Assembly: GCA_010909165.1 (NCBI GenBank)
Contig: MU008182.1
Span: 930,001 to 994,000 of the forward strand
Direction of reading: 5' to 3'
Source of the DNA: Anthoceros angustus
Taxonomy: Eukaryota > Plantae > Anthocerotophyta
Length of the DNA stretch: 64,000 nucleotides
The position numbers were made by a program, and so were the translations under genes. The notes under the pieces were generated by a model. That model saw only the letters and a list, made by a program, of their open reading frames with translations. It had not been told where the DNA came from and did no database searches. Shown here in pieces: positions 26,450 through 45,789 of the stretch (within the stretch, counting starts at the first letter, position 1; the number at the start of each line of letters is the position of its first letter).

Positions 26450-27417
26450 CTAATTCCCGGGGACGAATTTGGTGGCATAGGCCCAGGCGTTGTTGTTGGA
26501 GGGGTCGGCCAGGTGGTCGAGGAGGTTCTCGATGGGGCCCTTGCCGGTGACGATGGCCTGCACAAAGAAGCCAAAGGCGGAAAACTGGGCCAGTCTTCCA
26601 TTCTTGATCTCCTTCACCTTGAGCTCGGCGAAGGTGTCGGGGTCGTCGGCGAGGCCCAGGGGGTCGAAGGCGCCGCCGGGGTAGAGCGGGTCGGTCACCT
26701 CGCCCAGGGGCCCGCCCGCAATGCGGTAGCCCTCCACCGCCCCGATCAAGATCACCTGCACGGCCAGCACGGCCAGGATGCTCTTTGCGTGGATGAGAGC
26801 CGGGTTGCCCAGGTAGTTGAGCCCCTCCTCGGAGAAGATGACGGCGCCGGCCTTGAACCACACGGGCTCCTGGATGGGCACCCCGTACTTGGCCAGGATC
26901 TCGGGGGTCACGATCCCGAGCGTTCCCAGCAAGGCCCACCGCGAGTGGATCACCTCCAGCTCCCGGTTCCTGGCGAACGTCTCGGGATCAGACGAGAGGC
27001 CTGCCGTGTCCCAGCCGTAGTCGCCCGGGAACTCGCCCTTGAGGTAGCTCGGGGGCTCGCCGGAGAGCGGGCCGAGGTACTTGGGCCTGTCGGGCCCGTA
27101 CCTGCGCAACACACCATTCACGATTCATTCCCACGAGAATCATTCATTCTATCAATCCATCAATCAATCAAACAATCAAACAATCAAACAATCCCGCCTT
27201 GCCGGGCCGGCTGCATTGCATCCCACTGGAATGCAATTGAGAAGGGGGCGATGGAGTACCAGATGCTGTCGGACTTGGAGGCCTGCGTCTTGCGCATGGT
27301 GACCCTGGCGTCCGCAGCCCTGCCGCCGTTCACCTTCCTGGAGAGCTCGGAGGGCGCCTTCAGCACGGCCTGGCCGGCGAAGGTGGCGCTGCTGATGCAT
27401 GCCGAGACGGCGGCCAT
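26450..27417 (-). CDS. Lhcb: Major light-harvesting chlorophyll a/b protein (Lhcb1/2/LhcbM type), 269 aa precursor, 2 exons; mature part Met/Cys-free
   Basis: Exon1 27417-27260, GT-AG intron 27259-27102, exon2 27101-26450. Transit peptide ends VTM-RKT. Motifs [46 protein letters not shown]. Confidence 0.97.
27152..27193. repeat. (CAAT/CAAA)n microsatellite in the Lhcb intron
   Basis: tcaatccatcaatcaatcaaacaatcaaacaatcaaacaatc. Confidence 0.85.
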
Positions 27418-27518: not shown

Positions 27519-27680
27519 ATATATATGTTTGGTAGGCGGGCGGGGCGCGCGGCCAGGTGCATGCACCGACGGTAATCGGCAGGGCCCAATCGGGGGCCAG
27601 GATTCCCTCCAGCGCTTCAACTACGGTTCGGGCGACTGACTGCGGGTTACTTCTGTGGCGTACGTGCATTGAACCTGGAT
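27519..27680 (-). promoter_or_regulatory. Lhcb promoter: TATA-like box, EIL-type near-palindrome and UPE-box-like element
   Basis: ATATATAT at ~27519-27527; AGGTGCATGCACCG at 27555-27568; ACGTGCATTGAACCTGGAT at 27662-27680. Confidence 0.6.
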
Positions 27681-28441
27681 AGGCGAGGCGACAACATAAG
27701 CCTGCACCAACGCTCCTTCATGTTGCATCGCCTGTGAGCGTCTAAGGGGGCTGAAGTTTTAAGGCTTGAAGGACTCGACCACTTCAATTTGGCAGCATTA
27801 GCTCTACTCTATGTAAGCCAGTTCCACCACACTAAAAAGGAGGAGATATGTTTGAAGTTACATTGGATAAGGTTCGGTGTGAAGATAATGTCCTTGAACA
27901 AGTATAGTCTTGTCACCTCTTACTGTGCAGTAAAATGAATCTGTAGTAGCCTCAAGGTTCTATTTTTTCAGTTTATGGAAACATTGATGGGTAGTGTTGG
28001 AGTTGTGGGGTACAGGATCCGAGAAAGAAGGAGAGGAGAAGGAGTCTATGCGACAAAGATCTGTATGATTCAGATTAAATTTATGTCTCGTTATATGTAG
28101 AAATGTAAACCTTCAAAAAAATAAGAAGGCGGTGATTAATAAAGGTTTACCTACAACAATAACAATCAAATTTCATGCACATAAGTTGCACACTTGCTTC
28201 CTAAAATGGAATTCTTTTCCCATAGTCATCTCTAAATGTATATACTTATATCAAATAATTGTATTTCCTACACTTTTCTGTACAAAACAATTTGTTACAT
28301 CAAGTTTTTGTAGTACTTAAATCGATTTTGGGACGATTTACTGGAAACAAAGAGATGAGATATAACAGCCCATCTTCTATACTATGTATTGCTAAAGAGA
28401 GTTTCATTGCTAAAGGCACCATTACCCTATCTAACCTCATT

Positions 28442-37285: not shown

Positions 37286-39832
37286 TCAATGCCTGTCTCT
37301 GCAAGAACAGGAGCCATCCGCAAAGCGATGAACTCGGTGAGCGTCTCTCACGATGATTTCCCGCTTCTCGAGGCGGGACATGATCTTGGTGCTGCTATGG
37401 CAGTCCGTACACATGCGAAGGTTCTTGGTGACCAGCAGCGTGGTGCCCTCCGGCGTGTTGAGGAGGCCATATGCTAGAGCTAGCTTCTCGGCATGGCCGC
37501 ACAGTGCGAGCTCCTTCTCCTGCTCGTTCAAGGCCTTCAGAACCAGGTCTGTGTGCGGGATGTGGCCTCCTTCCTCCTTTACCCTGGCGTATACGCTGGT
37601 GAGCTTCGGGGAAAGATCGGACCTGTCTTCCCCGACGGTGAACTCGTGCAGGGTTTTCTGCACTTCGATGCACGCCTTGGCGGGCTTCTTCACTGCCCCT
37701 GCCGATTTTCTGAGCCTTTCTATCCTACCAACGTCGTCCCACCTGCCGGCGTCGGCGTAGATGTTCTCCAGCAGCACGTACGAGCTGGCATGTTCAGGAG
37801 CCAGTTTCACGACCCGGTCGAAGCAGCGCTGGCCGCGCTCCACGTCGCCATAGCTTCTGCATGCTGTGAGGAGAGATTTCCAGCCCACTTCGTCCTGCTC
37901 GCAAGCCCTTGTTTGGAGTACATGCTCTGCCTCGGCCAGATGGCCTGACCGGCCGAGGAGATCCACCATGCAGTTGTAGTGGGAATCGGTGGCCGGGATG
38001 CCGTAATCTTCTACCATGATTTTGAAATACTGCTGGCCCTCGTGCACCAAGCCGGCGTGACTACATGCCACCAGAAGGCAGAGGAAGGTGGTCTCGTTGG
38101 GCTGGATGCCGTGCTGGAGCATCTGCTGGAAGCACTGGATGGCCAGTTGGGCATCGCCATGTTCAGCGTATCCGTTCAGCAAGGCTGTCCATGTGACCAC
38201 GCCCTTCGTGGGCAGGTTGTGGAATACGGTAAGCGCTTCCTCCAATCGTCCGCACTTCGCATACATGTTGACGAGGCCGTTGCCGGTGATAGCATGAGCT
38301 TCCAAGCCTGTTGCACGGATCTTGGAGTGAAGCTCCCTCCCCTGCTGCAAGGCTCCCACATTGGCACATGCTTGAAGAAGACATACGAAGGTGACATGAT
38401 CAGCTGGAGTTATGCCCTCGTGCTGCATGCTAGCATACAGATCAAGGGCCTCTTGCCCAAGCCCCTGGTGGGTATATCCTGCGATCATGGAATTCCATGT
38501 CACCACATCTCTTGTGGGCAAGCGGTCGAATAAATTGCGAGCATCCTCCAAGCTCCCGCATTTGGCATACATGTTCACCAGGCTGTTACCGATGACTGCA
38601 TCAGCTTCTAGCCCTTGTTCACGAAGCTGTAAGTGAAGACGCTTTCCCTGTTGCAGGGATCTTGAACTAGCGCATGCTTGAAGAAGGCACACGAAGGTGA
38701 CATGATCAGCTGGACTGATGCCCTCCTGCTGCATGCTTCCATACAGGGCCAGGGCTTGTTGCCCTAGCCCTTGTTGGGTATATCCTGCGATCATGGCAGT
38801 CCATGTCACCACATTCTTGGAGGGCAGATTGTCGAACACCTTGCGAGCATCAGTCAAGCCTCCGCACTTGGCATACATATTCACTAGGCTGTTGCCAATA
38901 TAAACATCGTCCATCATACCACAGGCCTGGACATCACCATGAACCTCCTTCCCCGAAACCAGGTCCTGTGCAGAAGCACAAGCCTTGAGGACTGCCACGA
39001 ATATATGGTTGTTTGGCTCCACACCCGTCACTCGAAATTGCCGATACAGGTCGATAGCCTGTGCGGCCTGTCCCTGTCGGGCATGGGCCAAGATGATGCA
39101 GGACCACATGTGAAGGTTGGGTCTGGACACTTTCGTGAAGACCAGCCCTGCGTCATCCAATTTCCCAAGAGAAGCATACATCCTGATGATGTGCGTGGCT
39201 AAGAAAGCATTGCCTTCATACCCATATTTGAGAGCAAGAGCATGGACAAGCCTGCCACAAGCCAGATTCTTGTGCGCCGTACACCTCTGCAGGAGGCCGT
39301 AGAAGACGGCGGTGGTGACATGACCTCCTCCCTGCACCAGGAGATCCAAAGCTGCAACAGCCTCGTTCAGGTCTGCCTCCTGACAACGTTTCCTCAAGGT
39401 CTGAGCCATGGAGTGCTCCATGGAAGCACGACACCCCCTCATCTGAACATCCCACACAGCCAGCTGAGAATCCACCCATGGCGGCTTCTGATAGTTGCTC
39501 AGCCATATGGGCTCGTCGGACGTCTTGTGCCTGAAGTCGGGATGGCGGGGGCTTTCTTTATCAGCCCTATTGTCCCACCACTCCGAGGGATGCAAGAAGA
39601 AGTGGTGCCACAAGAGCTCCTGTCGGTGCTTCTCTGTGATTCCCTCTGTGCTTGCATCGAACTGTTCCGGGCGGTTGCGGAACCTATATCCGCCTTTCAC
39701 ACAAGAGGAGCTTGGGTGAGCTGACAACAAGTTGGGCATGTAGGACACCCCAGAGCGTGGCTGCGTCACCAACTTCCCCGAATCCCAGAGTGCGCAATCC
39801 GACACCAATGCCAGTTCCAGCTGCATCCCCAT
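37286..39832 (-). CDS. PLS-E1-E2-DYW:KP (DRH-type) PPR protein, candidate U-to-C RNA-editing factor, with N-terminal OSB-like PDF motif
   Basis: KKPAKACIEV replaces the PG box; HAEKLA; KNLRMCTDCH; HRFADGSCSCRDRH terminus; N-terminal WHHFFLHPSEWWDNRADKESPRHPDFRHK..PIWL...PPWV. Confidence 0.95.
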   Translation of the reverse strand: MGMQLELALVSDCALWDSGKLVTQPRSGVSYMPNLLSAHPSSSCVKGGYRFRNRPEQFDASTEGITEKHRQELLWHHFFLHPSEWWDNRADKESPRHPDFRHKTSDEPIWLSNYQKPPWVDSQLAVWDVQMRGCRASMEHSMAQTLRKRCQEADLNEAVAALDLLVQGGGHVTTAVFYGLLQRCTAHKNLACGRLVHALALKYGYEGNAFLATHIIRMYASLGKLDDAGLVFTKVSRPNLHMWSCIILAHARQGQAAQAIDLYRQFRVTGVEPNNHIFVAVLKACASAQDLVSGKEVHGDVQACGMMDDVYIGNSLVNMYAKCGGLTDARKVFDNLPSKNVVTWTAMIAGYTQQGLGQQALALYGSMQQEGISPADHVTFVCLLQACASSRSLQQGKRLHLQLREQGLEADAVIGNSLVNMYAKCGSLEDARNLFDRLPTRDVVTWNSMIAGYTHQGLGQEALDLYASMQHEGITPADHVTFVCLLQACANVGALQQGRELHSKIRATGLEAHAITGNGLVNMYAKCGRLEEALTVFHNLPTKGVVTWTALLNGYAEHGDAQLAIQCFQQMLQHGIQPNETTFLCLLVACSHAGLVHEGQQYFKIMVEDYGIPATDSHYNCMVDLLGRSGHLAEAEHVLQTRACEQDEVGWKSLLTACRSYGDVERGQRCFDRVVKLAPEHASSYVLLENIYADAGRWDDVGRIERLRKSAGAVKKPAKACIEVQKTLHEFTVGEDRSDLSPKLTSVYARVKEEGGHIPHTDLVLKALNEQEKELALCGHAEKLALAYGLLNTPEGTTLLVTKNLRMCTDCHSSTKIMSRLEKREIIVRDAHRVHRFADGSCSCRDRH

Positions 39833-40028
39833 GTGATCAACATTGGTTCCTCAGTCGCCCACAATCACACATTGCCCGGGCGAAACCAGCTCTGGCAACT
39901 CCAGCCTGTTAGCTCCTGTCGAGAGGAGCAATTGTGTCATGTGGGTTTCAATTTACATGTCCAAAACAAGTACTGTCCATTTCTGGGTGTGATGCCAGTG
40001 GGTGCTGCACGCTCTTCGTAGCTGGCCT

Positions 40029-43000
40029 ATGGATTGTCTGTGTAGATTTGGATCCTCCACCTTGTATCCGAAGCTGCTAACTCGTCGGGCGGACTGCGTT
40101 ATTAGTAGATTCTGCAGGGGGGATGTTCGTGTTGCCTTCCAGAACGCCGATCATGTGACGGGGCTGTGTACGGATGGAGCAATGGCTGAGGCACTGGATG
40201 CTCTGCAGATCATGGAGGAGGAGGGCATTGTGGCCTCGCTTGAGACTTGTGCGTCTCTCTTGCAGAGGTGCAGCAAACTAAAGTCTCTGTCCCAGGCCAA
40301 GCTAGTACATGCTTACATTGCAAAAAATGGGCTAGAATCGCAGGGCTGCCTTGGTGACTTGGCTGTCAACATGTTTGTCAAGTGCGGGAGTTTTCACGAT
40401 GCAGTGGAGGTCTTCAACAGGTTGCCGGAACGCACCGTTTTCTCTTGGACGGTGCTTATTTCAGGCTACACAGAGCAAGGGAGGGTTGAAGAGGCTTTTA
40501 AAGCTTTCCGGCAGATGAAAGTGGAAGGTGTGAAGCCCAATTCCTACACTTATGTGAGTATGCTGAAGGCCTGCAGGAGCGTAGCAGATCTCCAGAAAGG
40601 GAAGCAGATTCACGCTGAAGTTTTAGCTACGAGGTCGTTCAACCTGTTTGTGGGCACAGCTTTGATCAGTATGTATGCAAAGTGCGGGAGCATGAAAGAT
40701 GCCCGGGATGTCTTCGACAAATTGGAGCAGCCCAACGTTGTGTCATGGAATGCGATGATTGCAGGATATGCTCAAAATAAGCAGAGTGACCTTGCACTGC
40801 AGCTCTTTTCCCTGATGCAAGAAGAGGGTGTGCAATCAGACAAATGGACTTTTGTCAGTGCACTCAAGGCGTGTAGTGGCTTGGCAGCGCTGGAAGGGGA
40901 GACTCTCATTCATGGACAAGGTGTGAAGTTGGAGTCATTGTGGAGGGGCAAGATTATCCACTCGGAAGGTGTTGGAAGAGGCTACGAGTCTGATGTGTTT
41001 GTTGCCAACACTCTGGTGCATATGTATGCGACATGTGGGAGTATACGGGAGGCCAGGTATATGTTTGACAAATTGCTGCAGCGTGATCTGGTGTCCTGGA
41101 ATGCGGTCATTGCTAGCTATGCTCAGCAACAACAGGGTGAAGAAGCTCTGCAACTGTATAGACAAATGCAGGATGAAGGTGTTGAGCCTGATAAATGGAC
41201 CTTGGTTAGTGTGCTTAAAGCTTGCGGCAATCTGGCTACGGAGAAGAAAACTTGTATTGAGGGACAGACGTTGAAAGTGGAGGCCCTGAGGATGGGTAAG
41301 GCTGTCCATAATCTGGCTGTTAGACTGGGTTGTATATCAGACAAATTTGTTGGGAATACACTTGTCAACATGTATGCACGTTGTGGGGGCCTGCACCAGG
41401 CCAGACATGTCTTCAAGAACTTGGTGCACAAGGATGTGGTGACATGGAATGGCCTGATTGCAGGCTATTGTGAGCAAGAGGAAGGTCACAAGGCTATTCA
41501 ATTGTATTCAGAGATGCAAGCCGAAGGTGTGCAACCGAACAGGCATACCTTTGTCAGTGTACTCAGAGCATGTGGCAGCCTAGCAGGCACGGAAACAGAC
41601 ACTCTGCTCCATGGAAAACCACTGAAAGCCCAGTCCCTTGGAATTGGTCAAAAGATTCACGGAGCAGTTGTCAGACAAGGGTATGAGGAAGACCCACATG
41701 TCAGTGCAGCTTTGATAAGTATGTACTCAAGATGCGGGAGCATCTCAGATGCACAGCTTGTATTTGACACTCTCCACCAGCGGAATTTGATGTCATGGAA
41801 TGCGCTGCTTGCAGGATATGCACAGCACGACGAAGGCGAACAAAGCTTTAACGTGTATTTGAAAATGCAGGAGGATGGTGTGAAGCCTGACTGTAGAACG
41901 ATCTGTAGCTTGCTGAAAGTATGTGGCAGTCTGGCAGCCAAGGAACAAGAGGTAGTTGTGGATGGTCAGTCAGTGACACCAAATTCGCTGAGCAAGGTGG
42001 AGTCTATCCATGGTGCGATTGTTAGATGGGGTTTTGAATCTGATGCAACAGTCGGAAATGCTTTGGTTCATGCATACTCAAAATGTGGGAGCATGGTGCA
42101 AGCTCAGCAAGTGTTCGCAGGGTTGGACGAGCCTGGTTTGGTCACATGGACGGCGATGGTCGCAGGGTATACTAAGCAAGAGCAAGGCCAGAGGGCATTG
42201 CAACTGTCTAGACAATTACTAGGGAGTAGTTTGGAACCAGATGACGCCACCCTTGTGTCTATCCTGAAAGCCTGTGCCTGTGTTGGAGCCCTAGAAGTCT
42301 GTCGGCAGATCCATCACCATCTTCTCGGTAGGATAGACTCCAGCATGCTCGTAGCAAACACTCTCATCCACGCATATGGAAAATGTGGAAGCATGCTTGC
42401 AGCTCAACGTGTCTTTGACTCGCTGTCCCACCCTGACGTGATCTCATGGACAGCCCTCATGGCAGGCTATGCTCGCCAAGGTGCGTCCAGAAGGATCGTG
42501 CAATGCTTTGACGAGATGCGAAAGGTGGGTGAAGACCCAGATGAAGCCACATTCATTCCCCTGCTCACCGCATGCAGCCACTCGGGGTGGGTAGACAGAG
42601 GCCTAGAATACTTCGGGTCCATGGGTAGGGAGTTTGGCATCCCTGCAACCATCCAGCACTATGCTGTTCTGGTTGACTTGCTAGGCCGTGCGGGACTCTT
42701 CGGAAAGGCAGAGAACTTGATCTCCAGGATGCCGATGCAACCTGACTTGGCAATCTGGATGTCCTTGCTGAGTGCATGCCGAAAGTATGTGAACGTAGAA
42801 GTTGGCAGACGTGCCTTCGACTGCGCTGTGAGTCTCGCACCAGCAAACAGTGCGGCCTATGTGCTCATGTCCCATATCTACAATTGCGCTGAGATGTTCG
42901 AGGATGCATCCCAGCTGCTGGGAGTGAAAGCAGCTGCAGTCTCATGGAAGGAGCTTGGCCAGAGCTGGATCGAGCATGGGCAGGAGGTGCATGTATTTGT

Positions 43001-43109
43001 GGCTGGGGACAGGGTGCATCAGCAGACTTGGCAAATCTTGGAGGTCCTTAAAGAAATTTCTGTTTCTGCACATCTTGGACGTGCACGAATGAGTAGTGCC
43101 AGCAAATGA
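40029..43109 (+). CDS. PLS-class PPR E+ protein with four extended (LL-type) L motifs, no DYW
   Basis: First in-frame ATG 40029; L motifs carry ~15 aa inserts; ends KELGQSWIEHGQEVHVFVAGD..H. Confidence 0.93.
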   Translation: MDCLCRFGSSTLYPKLLTRRADCVISRFCRGDVRVAFQNADHVTGLCTDGAMAEALDALQIMEEEGIVASLETCASLLQRCSKLKSLSQAKLVHAYIAKNGLESQGCLGDLAVNMFVKCGSFHDAVEVFNRLPERTVFSWTVLISGYTEQGRVEEAFKAFRQMKVEGVKPNSYTYVSMLKACRSVADLQKGKQIHAEVLATRSFNLFVGTALISMYAKCGSMKDARDVFDKLEQPNVVSWNAMIAGYAQNKQSDLALQLFSLMQEEGVQSDKWTFVSALKACSGLAALEGETLIHGQGVKLESLWRGKIIHSEGVGRGYESDVFVANTLVHMYATCGSIREARYMFDKLLQRDLVSWNAVIASYAQQQQGEEALQLYRQMQDEGVEPDKWTLVSVLKACGNLATEKKTCIEGQTLKVEALRMGKAVHNLAVRLGCISDKFVGNTLVNMYARCGGLHQARHVFKNLVHKDVVTWNGLIAGYCEQEEGHKAIQLYSEMQAEGVQPNRHTFVSVLRACGSLAGTETDTLLHGKPLKAQSLGIGQKIHGAVVRQGYEEDPHVSAALISMYSRCGSISDAQLVFDTLHQRNLMSWNALLAGYAQHDEGEQSFNVYLKMQEDGVKPDCRTICSLLKVCGSLAAKEQEVVVDGQSVTPNSLSKVESIHGAIVRWGFESDATVGNALVHAYSKCGSMVQAQQVFAGLDEPGLVTWTAMVAGYTKQEQGQRALQLSRQLLGSSLEPDDATLVSILKACACVGALEVCRQIHHHLLGRIDSSMLVANTLIHAYGKCGSMLAAQRVFDSLSHPDVISWTALMAGYARQGASRRIVQCFDEMRKVGEDPDEATFIPLLTACSHSGWVDRGLEYFGSMGREFGIPATIQHYAVLVDLLGRAGLFGKAENLISRMPMQPDLAIWMSLLSACRKYVNVEVGRRAFDCAVSLAPANSAAYVLMSHIYNCAEMFEDASQLLGVKAAAVSWKELGQSWIEHGQEVHVFVAGDRVHQQTWQILEVLKEISVSAHLGRARMSSASK

Positions 43110-43294
43110 CTGGACGTATATATATACCGTCCCCTGACATGCCATCCTCTCGGAGTAGGACTGGCCAACAAGGAAGCCGGCGGTTCATGTCACAAGTACA
43201 CGGGGTATGCAGCGAAGCCCTGACCGTTGGTGGTCGCTGATCCCTGTACGTCCTCAGGGCCGGAAGGACTAGCTTGTGGCGGATTAAATCGAGG

Positions 43295-45695
43295 ATGCCG
43301 AGTTCTACGTCTTTCCTGGTGTTTGGGGCGGGCGCCCTATTGGGAACCTGTGTCACCGTTGCTGTGCTCAAACTTAGTTCCCACAGACCCAGGTATTCCA
43401 AAGTTGGGGCTTTGAACACTGGGACAGCCCAGCTGGTGGAAATGTGTTCGAGCAGGTTTCAAGTTTGGTTTCTAACACTTGCTTGGGGTGTTGTTGCAAC
43501 AGATTTGATGAAAGCGGAGGCGATGATTCTCAAAGGGCCTGTGAGTATGGCAGACGGACTGACCTACTGCTTAGGAAAAGACTTATGGAAGTGAGTTGTC
43601 CACTGACCTGCCTTTTTTGGATTGGCAGTTGGATTTCAGGGAGAGGATGAGAAACCGGCTGCCATGAACAAGTCCACCTCAGTGGATCTTTTGCAGGACG
43701 AGATCACGGCAGAACATTTCACAAGGTCTCTATCCGTAGGCAACGAACATGTAGACTGATGTGTACTGGTCTGGCTCGCTGTGAGTCTGCTCCAACTTTT
43801 GTTGCATGGGGTACCATGAATGTTTGTTTATGGTTGATGGTTAGTGCAGGAATACCCAGTTTTTTGGTTCTGAAGGGCAGCTGAGAATTCATAGCTCCTT
43901 TGTTGTAGTCGTGGGACTCGGTGGCGTGGGCAGCCATGCAGCTGCTATGCTCCTACGATCAGGGGTGGGAAAGATTCGTCTTGTAGATTTTGATCAGGTA
44001 TGCCAGAGTCTCGTTGTTGTAGAACGGCATGTGTGTTAGTTGATGCTGTCGAGTTTCTAGAAGCCCTTACAGTGACTCTTCTGCTTTCCGATAGGTGTCC
44101 CTGTCATCTCTCAATCGTCATGCGGTAGCAACTAGGGGTGATGTTGGGTTGGCCAAGGCAGTTTGCTTGAAGAACCACTTTAACAGCATCTTTCCAGAGT
44201 GTGAAGTGGAGGCCAAGGTTCAGTTGTTTGATGCATCGTCTGCAGATGAGATCCTTTCAGGCTCACCAGACTTTGTCCTTGACTGCATCGATAACATAGA
44301 CACGAAGGTGAAGTGCCTGTCTCGTAATTGCCCACATTCTGTAGTGGAGTTACCTTGTGATTATCCATCAGCTGTGTTGTGTTCTGGAGTGCCTTGCGAT
44401 TGGCCATGTTCCTTTCTAGAGTGCCTCCGATTTGGTCATTTGACCAAACTTGTTCTTGCATTATCCAGACTTCTCCTCTTATGTCAGACCCCTACTTTTT
44501 GCAGGTGCTTCTGTTGGCGGCATGTGTGAAACGAGGTCTGAAGGTCGTGTCTGCTACTGGTGCTGGTGCACGTGCAGATCCCACTCGCATACGGGTTGCA
44601 GACTTATACGAGTCATCAATTGATCCTCTGGCTCGCTCAGTACGTGGAATCCAAGTATGTTGTTGAAACGACTTCGAAGCACGAGATGTCATAACCTTAT
44701 AGGGGTATGTTTCATGTCATGCAGGTAAGACACAGGCTGAGAAGGGAGCATGGCATAGACGGAGGACTGCCTGTTGTGTTCTCGACTGAGCGCCCAAAGA
44801 CAAAGCTGCTCCCATTTGAAGCTCCCAATGGAGAAGATGCAAATCCCTTGGACTATCAAGTAAGCATTTCTCTTGACGTGAACAGACATCCAGAGTGCTG
44901 CAGAACTGCAACGTAACATGAACTTGTTCCGGTCGTCAGGTTGTTCCAGGCTTCAGAGTGCGGATCATACCTGTGCTTGGCACCATTCCAGCTATATTTG
45001 GCCAGGTCATGGCCTCATACGTTGCCACACAGATTGCAGGCATGCCAGTGCAGCTAGAACCTGTCCTGAACCTGGATAAAGATCACTATGCCGCTCTGCA
45101 CCAGCGGCTCATCGAGCGTGAGGAGGAATGCTTCGGGACTGCAGCAGCTGTGGAGGTATGCCCCAGCACCCCACACTGTCCATCTTCTCAAAGCGTCTTC
45201 ATCTCACATCCCCTCATGTCAAGCAACAACCTCTGTGCCTTAGGTGGATAGAGAGGAAGTTGCATACATTGTTCGGGAACTGTGGCATGGACGCAGTGCC
45301 CGAGATCAGTCCAGGGGGAAGGTTGGACGAGGAATGTGGCGCTCCATGAACAACCTAACACTCACAAGGTCTCACTTCTCACCTCTCATGTCCCGTCTTA
45401 TGGTGCTCTCTTCCCACATCCTCATGTTTGCCTTGATGTTGGCAGATGGGACATGAGCAAAGCTCCCTCCATATCCAACCTGGTGCTGCTCACGTTCCAA
45501 GAGGTTAGATCCACACAACTCCAGCCGATTGGATTCCAGTTCACAAGTCCCCTTCCTTCTTGACCCCACTGTGGAGTATGGCAGGCGGAAGACCACTCGC
45601 GCACCACTTTGAACGACATCGAAAAGAACGAGCCTGAATATTTCCGGAGGGTGACACGCTTGTTGCAGCAAGCTCACCTCGACTTGTGCGCTTAA
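43295..45695 (+). CDS. tcdA: tRNA threonylcarbamoyladenosine dehydratase (TcdA/CsdL, ThiF/E1-like), multi-exon
   Basis: N-terminal TM; VVVVGLGGVGSHAA; RLVDFDQ/VSLSSLNRHA; DFVLDCIDNIDTK; GAGARADPTR; DPLARS; VVFSTE; IIPVLGTIPAIFG. Confidence 0.9.
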
Positions 45696-45789
45696 ATTTA
45701 TGTAAATATTAAATCAAAAAGCTATGGAATATGTGGCATTTGTGATAAGCCCGTAACCGATTGAATCGTCGGTGCCGCGACACCTGTCC

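What the first reader, a model, noticed from the sequence alone, without database searches (positions are those of the whole stretch)
27555..27680. UPE-box-like (SLIM1/EIL3) sulfur-deficiency element in the promoter of the S-free Lhcb
Seen: ACGTGCATTGAACCTGGAT at 27662-27680, ~245 bp upstream of the ATG, and the near-palindrome AGGTGCATGCACCG at 27555-27568 (ATGCACCT, one mismatch from the EIL site AYGWAYCT) just upstream of the TATA. Established, from memory: the UPE-box AGRTWCATTGAAYCTGGAC of angiosperm S-starvation genes (UP9C/LSU, APR) is bound by SLIM1/EIL factors. The match is 16/19 with the CATTGAAYCTGGA core intact. Inference: independent regulatory support for S-starvation induction, and a hint that an EIL-UPE regulon exists in this lineage and controls an antenna gene.
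Basis: partly seen in the sequence, partly recalled or inferred. Interest (0 to 1): 0.85.

Follow-up and report, generated by a model that had tools for sequence, protein, structure and literature searches.

The report
Conserved sulfur-switch DNA site in bryophytes
In front of a hornwort gene for a light-harvesting protein built without sulfur sits a short DNA site that resembles the sulfur-starvation switch of flowering plants and recurs before the matching genes of liverworts and peat moss, suggesting these plants swap in a sulfur-saving antenna under a control system as old as land plants.

Summary
Both boxes are real. The window is hornwort DNA; the gene is an intact, spliced Lhcb whose second exon (216 aa) has no Met or Cys. 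Box A (27662-27681) matches the published UPE-box at 17/20, p about 0.001 for this promoter, but outside hornworts it recurs only weakly (Riccia, p about 0.02). It is the best-conserved word between this promoter and S-free or S-poor Lhcb promoters of three liverworts and Sphagnum, which are otherwise unalignable. No close match (two mismatches or fewer) occurs in six ordinary bryophyte Lhcb promoters, and two algal S-free genes lack the element. B is two head-to-head EIL/SLIM1-type half-sites with no spacer; A is the same pair with a one-base spacer. Both spacings are reported for Arabidopsis EIN3. Best reading (0.6): an EIL dimer site that induces a sulfur-sparing antenna. Binding and induction are untested; ethylene/EIN3 and RY/B3 readings remain, and one survey finds no SLIM1-clade EIL in Anthoceros or Marchantia. 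The scan noted S-free LHCII genes in this genome before, but not the promoter element.

The parts
27550..27568 (-). Box B: two inverted EIL-type half-sites with no spacer (27555-27561 and 27562-27568) plus a SLIM1-like 3' extension (27550-27554, 4/5). 11/12 match to the SLIM1 DAP-seq site SEBS at 27550-27561. The centre also reads as an RY hexamer.
   Evidence: top conserved word in S-free Lhcb promoters of Calypogeia, Riccia, liverwort L006 (14/14 identical) and Sphagnum
27662..27681 (+). Box A: UPE-box-like element, two inverted half-sites with a 1-nt spacer plus extension (4/5); 17/20 to the UPE-box, 11/12 to SEBS at 27670-27681; antisense to the gene
   Evidence: similar box in the same orientation in both Riccia promoters (14/19, p 0.02-0.03)
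27581..27595 (+). CCAAT / site-II-like word between the two boxes, 14/15 identical to a word in the Calypogeia promoter (opposite orientation); probably a general Lhcb promoter element
   Evidence: alone it does not exceed the shuffle null
27520..27526 (-). TATA-like run, 103 bp upstream of the ATG
   Evidence: sequence; the spliced contig ends at 27485, 35 nt downstream of it
27260..27417 (-). Lhcb exon 1: transit peptide and start of the mature protein
27102..27259 (-). 158-nt GT-AG intron
   Evidence: skipped in contig 21 of run X2; ends checked
26450..27101 (-). Lhcb exon 2: 216 aa of major LHCII (PF00504) with no Met or Cys

Best explanation
The promoter carries two binding sites for a dimer of an EIN3/EIL-family factor: an old no-spacer site (Box B) shared by hornwort, liverwort and moss S-free Lhcb genes, and a one-base-spacer UPE-type site (Box A) that adds to it in hornworts and perhaps Riccia. 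Under sulfate shortage the factor activates this gene, and the Met/Cys-free LHCII replaces ordinary LHCII, saving about 5-7 sulfur atoms per copy of a very abundant protein. Shown here: the boxes, their match to published SLIM1/EIL motifs, conservation of B, and the S-free protein. Inferred: EIL binding, activation, and sulfur as the signal.
For: It is the top word in an unbiased k-mer ranking (3 summed mismatches at k=14; best of 60 shuffles 10; control promoters 12), and the promoters share almost nothing else. Six ordinary bryophyte Lhcb promoters match with 3-6 mismatches. Flanks fit EIL rather than RY alone: all five lineages have at least 5/6 half-site flank letters and 4/5 of the SLIM1 extension, against 0 of 50 background RY-centred words (thresholds set after seeing the data). 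Both boxes are 11/12 to SEBS, p 0.006 for two hits; Box A departs at the same position as the rice SULTR1;1 site that EIL4 still activates (PMC13621327). Arabidopsis EIN3 peaks hold both a 1-nt-spacer and a no-spacer inverted repeat (bioRxiv 10.64898/2026.09.23.753179). Algal S-free genes lack B. Precedent: S-poor LHCBM9 is induced by S deprivation (PMC4344250).
Against: No binding or expression data under sulfur shortage. In the EIN3 atlas only the 1-nt-spacer motif gave a gel shift, and I could not see the motif letters there, so equating it with A and B is my inference. Box B half-sites carry C at position 3, where tebs and the UPE-box have A/T. PMC9136324 reports one EIN3-type EIL in Anthoceros and Marchantia. 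The RY hexamer is kept in every copy of B. Box A is absent from Calypogeia and L006, and its half-site in Sphagnum is mutated in S. compactum. One control (Riccia Lhcb2-like gene) has a degenerate no-spacer hit at -120. Only four independent outside lineages were sampled.
Confidence: 0.6

Rival explanations
1. The boxes are EIL sites but read ethylene (submergence, crowding, stress) through the EIN3 ortholog, and the S-free LHCII is an oxidation-resistant stress antenna rather than a sulfur-sparing one.
For: One EIN3-type EIL reported for Anthoceros and Marchantia; MpEIN3 mediates ethylene-dependent stress tolerance (PMC9632724); both spacings were described for EIN3 itself.
Against: Every copy has 4/5 of the extension described for SLIM1 sites, though I could not check whether EIN3 shares that extension. 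The target's one distinctive trait is loss of all sulfur atoms. EIL1 also acts in the S-deficiency response (title cited), so the two readings can overlap.
Confidence: 0.15
2. Box B is an RY element bound by B3/LAV factors (ABI3, VAL), which induces the gene in desiccation/ABA or keeps it silent; Box A is a chance match.
For: The RY hexamer is intact in all copies of B; the conserved C at half-site position 3 is what RY needs and what tebs does not; ABI3 acts in moss stress responses (PMC5601040).
Against: RY alone does not explain the conserved flanks and extension (0 of 50 background RY-centred words have both), the R/Y variation that follows the tebs code, or Box A (p about 0.001).
Confidence: 0.13
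3. Box B is functional but is bound by a factor of another family, or by an EIL together with a partner, and the likeness to SLIM1 sites is partly coincidental.
For: The no-spacer EIN3 motif is enriched in vivo but gave no gel shift; conservation shows function, not the binder.
Against: A second, independently placed EIL-type box (A) sits in the same promoter.
Confidence: 0.1
4. Both boxes are chance matches.
For: SEBS with one mismatch is common (22 in the window); Box A is at null level in the unbiased test.
Against: Box B is conserved across hornwort, three liverworts and moss, far beyond shuffles.
Confidence: 0.02

Closest known systems
UPE-box of tobacco UP9C and Arabidopsis LSU/APR promoters (SLIM1/NtEIL2 site)
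   Same: Box A matches 17/20, with the same two inverted half-sites, 1-nt spacer and 3' extension.
   Different: Three substitutions, two in the left half-site; target is an antenna gene in a hornwort; binding not shown. Box B has no spacer.
SEBS, the SLIM1/EIL3 DAP-seq site, and rice SEBS-like sites (PMC13621327)
   Same: Both boxes match 11/12; Box A departs at the position tolerated in rice SULTR1;1.
   Different: Neither is canonical; bryophyte copies of B carry C or T at the free position and come as a fixed palindrome.
EIN3 inverted-repeat motifs IR1 and IR0 (bioRxiv 10.64898/2026.09.23.753179)
   Same: The two spacings correspond to Box A and Box B as I parse them.
   Different: Described for ethylene-type EIN3 in Arabidopsis; IR0 gave no gel shift; motif letters were not available to compare.
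Chlamydomonas LHCBM9 (PMC4344250)
   Same: Low-sulfur major LHCII isoform induced by sulfur deprivation.
   Different: LHCBM9 keeps 4 S atoms, this exon 2 has none; chlorophyte algae use other regulators (my own knowledge), and the Coccomyxa S-free gene lacks Box B.
RY element of B3/LAV factors (ABI3, FUS3, VAL)
   Same: Hexamer at the centre of Box B.
   Different: Box B conserves about 19 bp, well beyond the RY core.

Membership tests
UPE-box (Box A) | Match to the 20-nt consensus | tested here: inconclusive
   17/20, unique in the window, p about 0.001; near match, not exact
UPE-box (Box A) | Two overlapping inverted tebs-like half-sites, 1-nt spacer | tested here: met
   1 mismatch in 12 informative positions of the SEBS half-site pair; 0 such hits with extension in 174 kb background
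UPE-box (Box A) | Conserved in orthologous promoters | tested here: inconclusive
   Riccia only (p 0.02-0.03); three other hornwort species align across it at roughly 90% but per-base differences were not displayed
UPE-box (Box B) | 1-nt spacer between half-sites | tested here: not met
   no spacer in all five lineages; so B is not a UPE-box
SLIM1/EIL binding site (SEBS-like) | Half-site plus 3' extension | tested here: met
   11/12 for both boxes; extension 4/5 in all five lineages for B
SLIM1/EIL binding site (SEBS-like) | Bound by an EIL protein | not testable with these tools
   needs EMSA or DAP-seq
SLIM1 regulon | Target induced by sulfur deficiency, EIL-dependent | not testable with these tools
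   no sulfur-starvation run was offered
SLIM1 regulon | Motif enriched at sulfate uptake/assimilation genes of the same genome | not testable with these tools
   only this 64-kb window of the genome is accessible; no such gene was seen in it
SLIM1 regulon | A SLIM1-clade EIL gene exists in the lineage | not tested
   literature only: one EIN3-type EIL reported in Anthoceros angustus and Marchantia
RY element (Box B) | RY hexamer | tested here: met
   present in every copy
RY element (Box B) | Conservation limited to the core | tested here: not met
   flanks and extension conserved beyond background

The most novel reading that the evidence does not exclude
An EIL-controlled sulfur-starvation programme already existed in the common ancestor of land plants, possibly run by an EIN3-type factor before a separate SLIM1 clade took it over. 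In bryophytes it drives swapping of abundant photosynthetic proteins for sulfur-free isoforms (LHCII, perhaps also the S-free RbcS noted elsewhere in this genome) through a no-spacer palindromic site not described as a sulfur element. Flowering plants kept the regulator but lost the sulfur-sparing antenna.
Probability: 0.4. Interest if true: 0.85.

Novelty: new variant of a known kind. Interest (0 to 1): 0.68.

Why it matters
Transcriptional control of sulfur starvation is known from flowering plants (SLIM1) and from Chlamydomonas; my literature searches found nothing for bryophytes and no report of this element or of an S-free LHCII in land plants. A 19-bp site kept across hornwort, liverwort and moss gives a concrete handle on when EIL factors took up sulfur signalling and on whether land plants spare sulfur in their photosynthetic proteins. 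It yields a precise motif and target gene that can be tested by reporter and knockout in transformable bryophytes.

Tried and rejected
Plain tebs octamers: 9 in the window against 10.8 expected, so the one at 27935 means nothing. Two other look-alikes in the window (42985, 45067) lie in coding sequence and were set aside. The Box A half-site shared with Sphagnum (-585) looked conserved but lacks the left half and is mutated in S. compactum. Spacings of 2-12 nt showed no pattern. The metagenome scan gave only Sphagnum S-free loci and green-algal genes. Read-laying showed three other hornwort species aligning across both boxes but cut the table before those positions; contig depth (about 11-16 for this gene, up to thousands for paralogs) cannot rank expression and is not used as evidence. 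Mesotaenium S-free genes had no contigs. The tree with the six Met/Cys columns removed neither shows nor rejects one origin of the bryophyte S-free genes (p-AU 0.355). The bacterial promoter scan was uninformative.

Full report
Setting. The window is hornwort DNA: the closest relative of the gene is a Nothoceros aenigmaticus protein at 95% identity, and the window is rich in E/DYW-type PPR genes. The gene is a major LHCII (PF00504) on the - strand, ATG at 27417, with one 158-nt GT-AG intron (27102-27259) that is skipped in a contig of a run guessed to be RNA; that contig ends at 27485. Exon 2 encodes 216 aa with no Met or Cys, where ordinary Lhcb proteins have mostly 5-7. Searches were done on exon 2 by reference; the joined model was not searched.

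The observation. Box A at 27662-27681 matches the published UPE-box (PMC9229004) at 17/20. It is the only such match in 64 kb (0.07 expected), and p is about 0.001 within the 800-bp promoter. Box B at 27555-27568 is a near-perfect palindrome 29 bp upstream of a TATA-like run. Both match the SLIM1 DAP-seq site SEBS (PMC13621327) at 11/12; two such hits in this promoter have p 0.006.

Relatives. S-free or S-poor Lhcb genes exist in Calypogeia, Riccia (one Met left), an unnamed liverwort-type contig (L006), Sphagnum, Mesotaenium and several green algae. With the six Met/Cys columns removed, hornwort and liverwort copies group together (81/90). The Sphagnum copies fall outside the ordinary land-plant Lhcb clade, and one origin for all bryophyte copies is not rejected (p-AU 0.355). 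I fetched their upstream DNA and six ordinary bryophyte Lhcb promoters as controls.

Box B is the conserved element. Best matches within 800 bp upstream are 14/14 in L006 (-410), 13/14 in both Riccia genes (-584, -569), 12/14 in Calypogeia (-695; a second copy at -606) and 12/14 in Sphagnum jensenii (-184), each with shuffle p of 0.006 or less; one further Sphagnum allele has 11/14 (p 0.03). Controls match with 3-6 mismatches. In an unbiased ranking of every hornwort promoter word against four lineages, words overlapping B take the top ranks at k=10, 12 and 14; at k=14 the best has 3 summed mismatches, against 10 or more in 60 shuffles and 12 for control promoters. BLAST finds almost nothing else shared. 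S. compactum keeps B. The Coccomyxa S-free gene and an S-free gene on a metagenome contig, probably from a streptophyte alga (L092), lack it.

Box A is weaker. A similar box in the same orientation occurs in both Riccia promoters (14/19, p 0.02-0.03), which are recent duplicates, but not in Calypogeia, L006 or Sphagnum. In the unbiased test it scores at null level. Contigs of three other hornwort species align across both boxes at roughly 90% identity, but the output did not list differences at those positions, so constraint within hornworts is untested.

What the boxes are. Written with the SEBS half-site (WGNAYCT), A is an inverted pair with a 1-nt spacer, the UPE architecture (PMC4206189), and B is the same pair with no spacer; each has one mismatch and 4/5 of the SLIM1 extension on one side. 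All five lineages have the no-spacer pair with at most one mismatch and a 4/5 extension; background is 0.009 per 800 bp in 174 kb of bryophyte DNA, and one of six controls has a degenerate hit. These thresholds were set after seeing the data. A 2026 binding atlas reports exactly these two spacings for Arabidopsis EIN3, the no-spacer form enriched in vivo and only the 1-nt form shifting in a gel; the motif letters were not available, so the equation is inferred. EIN3 binds as a homodimer to inverted sites (PMC4564277, where other probes favoured a 10-bp gap). The centre of B is also an RY hexamer, kept in every copy. However, none of 50 background RY-centred words has both the flanks and the extension that all five lineages show.

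Mechanism. Most likely an EIL dimer binds B, and A where present, and switches on a Met/Cys-free LHCII when sulfate is short, as Chlamydomonas does with S-poor LHCBM9 (PMC4344250). Shown: sequence, motif match, conservation, specificity for S-free paralogs. Inferred: binder, direction and signal. The main caveat is the factor: one survey finds a single EIN3-type EIL in Anthoceros and Marchantia (PMC9136324), which leaves ethylene as a rival signal or means that an EIN3-type protein handles sulfur there. No sulfur-starvation data and no sulfate-assimilation promoters were within reach.

Novelty. The motifs belong to a known family, and sulfur-sparing LHCII is known in algae. Ten literature searches found no report of an EIL sulfur element in bryophytes or of this palindrome. 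Earlier notes of this scan describe S-free LHCII copies and an S-free RbcS in the same genome but not the promoter element. Verdict: observation confirmed, interpretation partly supported with the weight shifted from Box A to Box B; new variant of a known kind; interest 0.68.

Noticed in passing
L004:827-6426 and L094:1801-7424: In Sphagnum the S-free Lhcb lies directly downstream of another Lhcb in the same orientation (an ordinary S-containing one in L004); only the S-free one has Box B, a neat internal control.
   Followed up: yes
L002 and L005: Riccia fluitans has two tail-to-tail copies of the S-poor gene, each with one Met in helix B and both boxes upstream.
   Followed up: yes
L001:4300-4500: Calypogeia has two no-spacer palindromes plus two further SEBS-like half-sites clustered within about 190 bp.
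   Followed up: partly
proteins P0267, P0323, P0324; P0205, P0231: Mesotaenium endlicherianum has three S-free LHCII genes (no contigs available). No S-free LHCII from Marchantia, Physcomitrium or vascular plants came up in three searches, which does not prove absence.
   Followed up: partly
L092:2361-3403: S-free LHCII on a metagenome contig, probably a streptophyte alga, with a different intron position; lacks Box B and has one 11/12 SEBS-like site at about -264 (chance level).
   Followed up: partly
window:28442-29764: 440-codon acidic, Asp-rich repeat ORF on the - strand just upstream of the Lhcb promoter, in AT-rich DNA, with no Pfam match.
   Followed up: no
window:2251-14178 and 37286-43109: Cluster of at least six long intronless PLS-class PPR genes (E or DYW type), typical of hornwort RNA editing.
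   Followed up: partly
window:24400-25600 and 43200-45700: By eye, a COX11-like gene downstream of the Lhcb and a spliced ThiF/TcdA-like gene; a second copy of Box A's right half (45067-45078) lies in an exon of the latter.
   Followed up: no
L089:9875-9900: The Riccia Lhcb2-like control promoter has a degenerate no-spacer hit at -120 that overlaps an evening-element-like word; chance or a weak site.
   Followed up: partly
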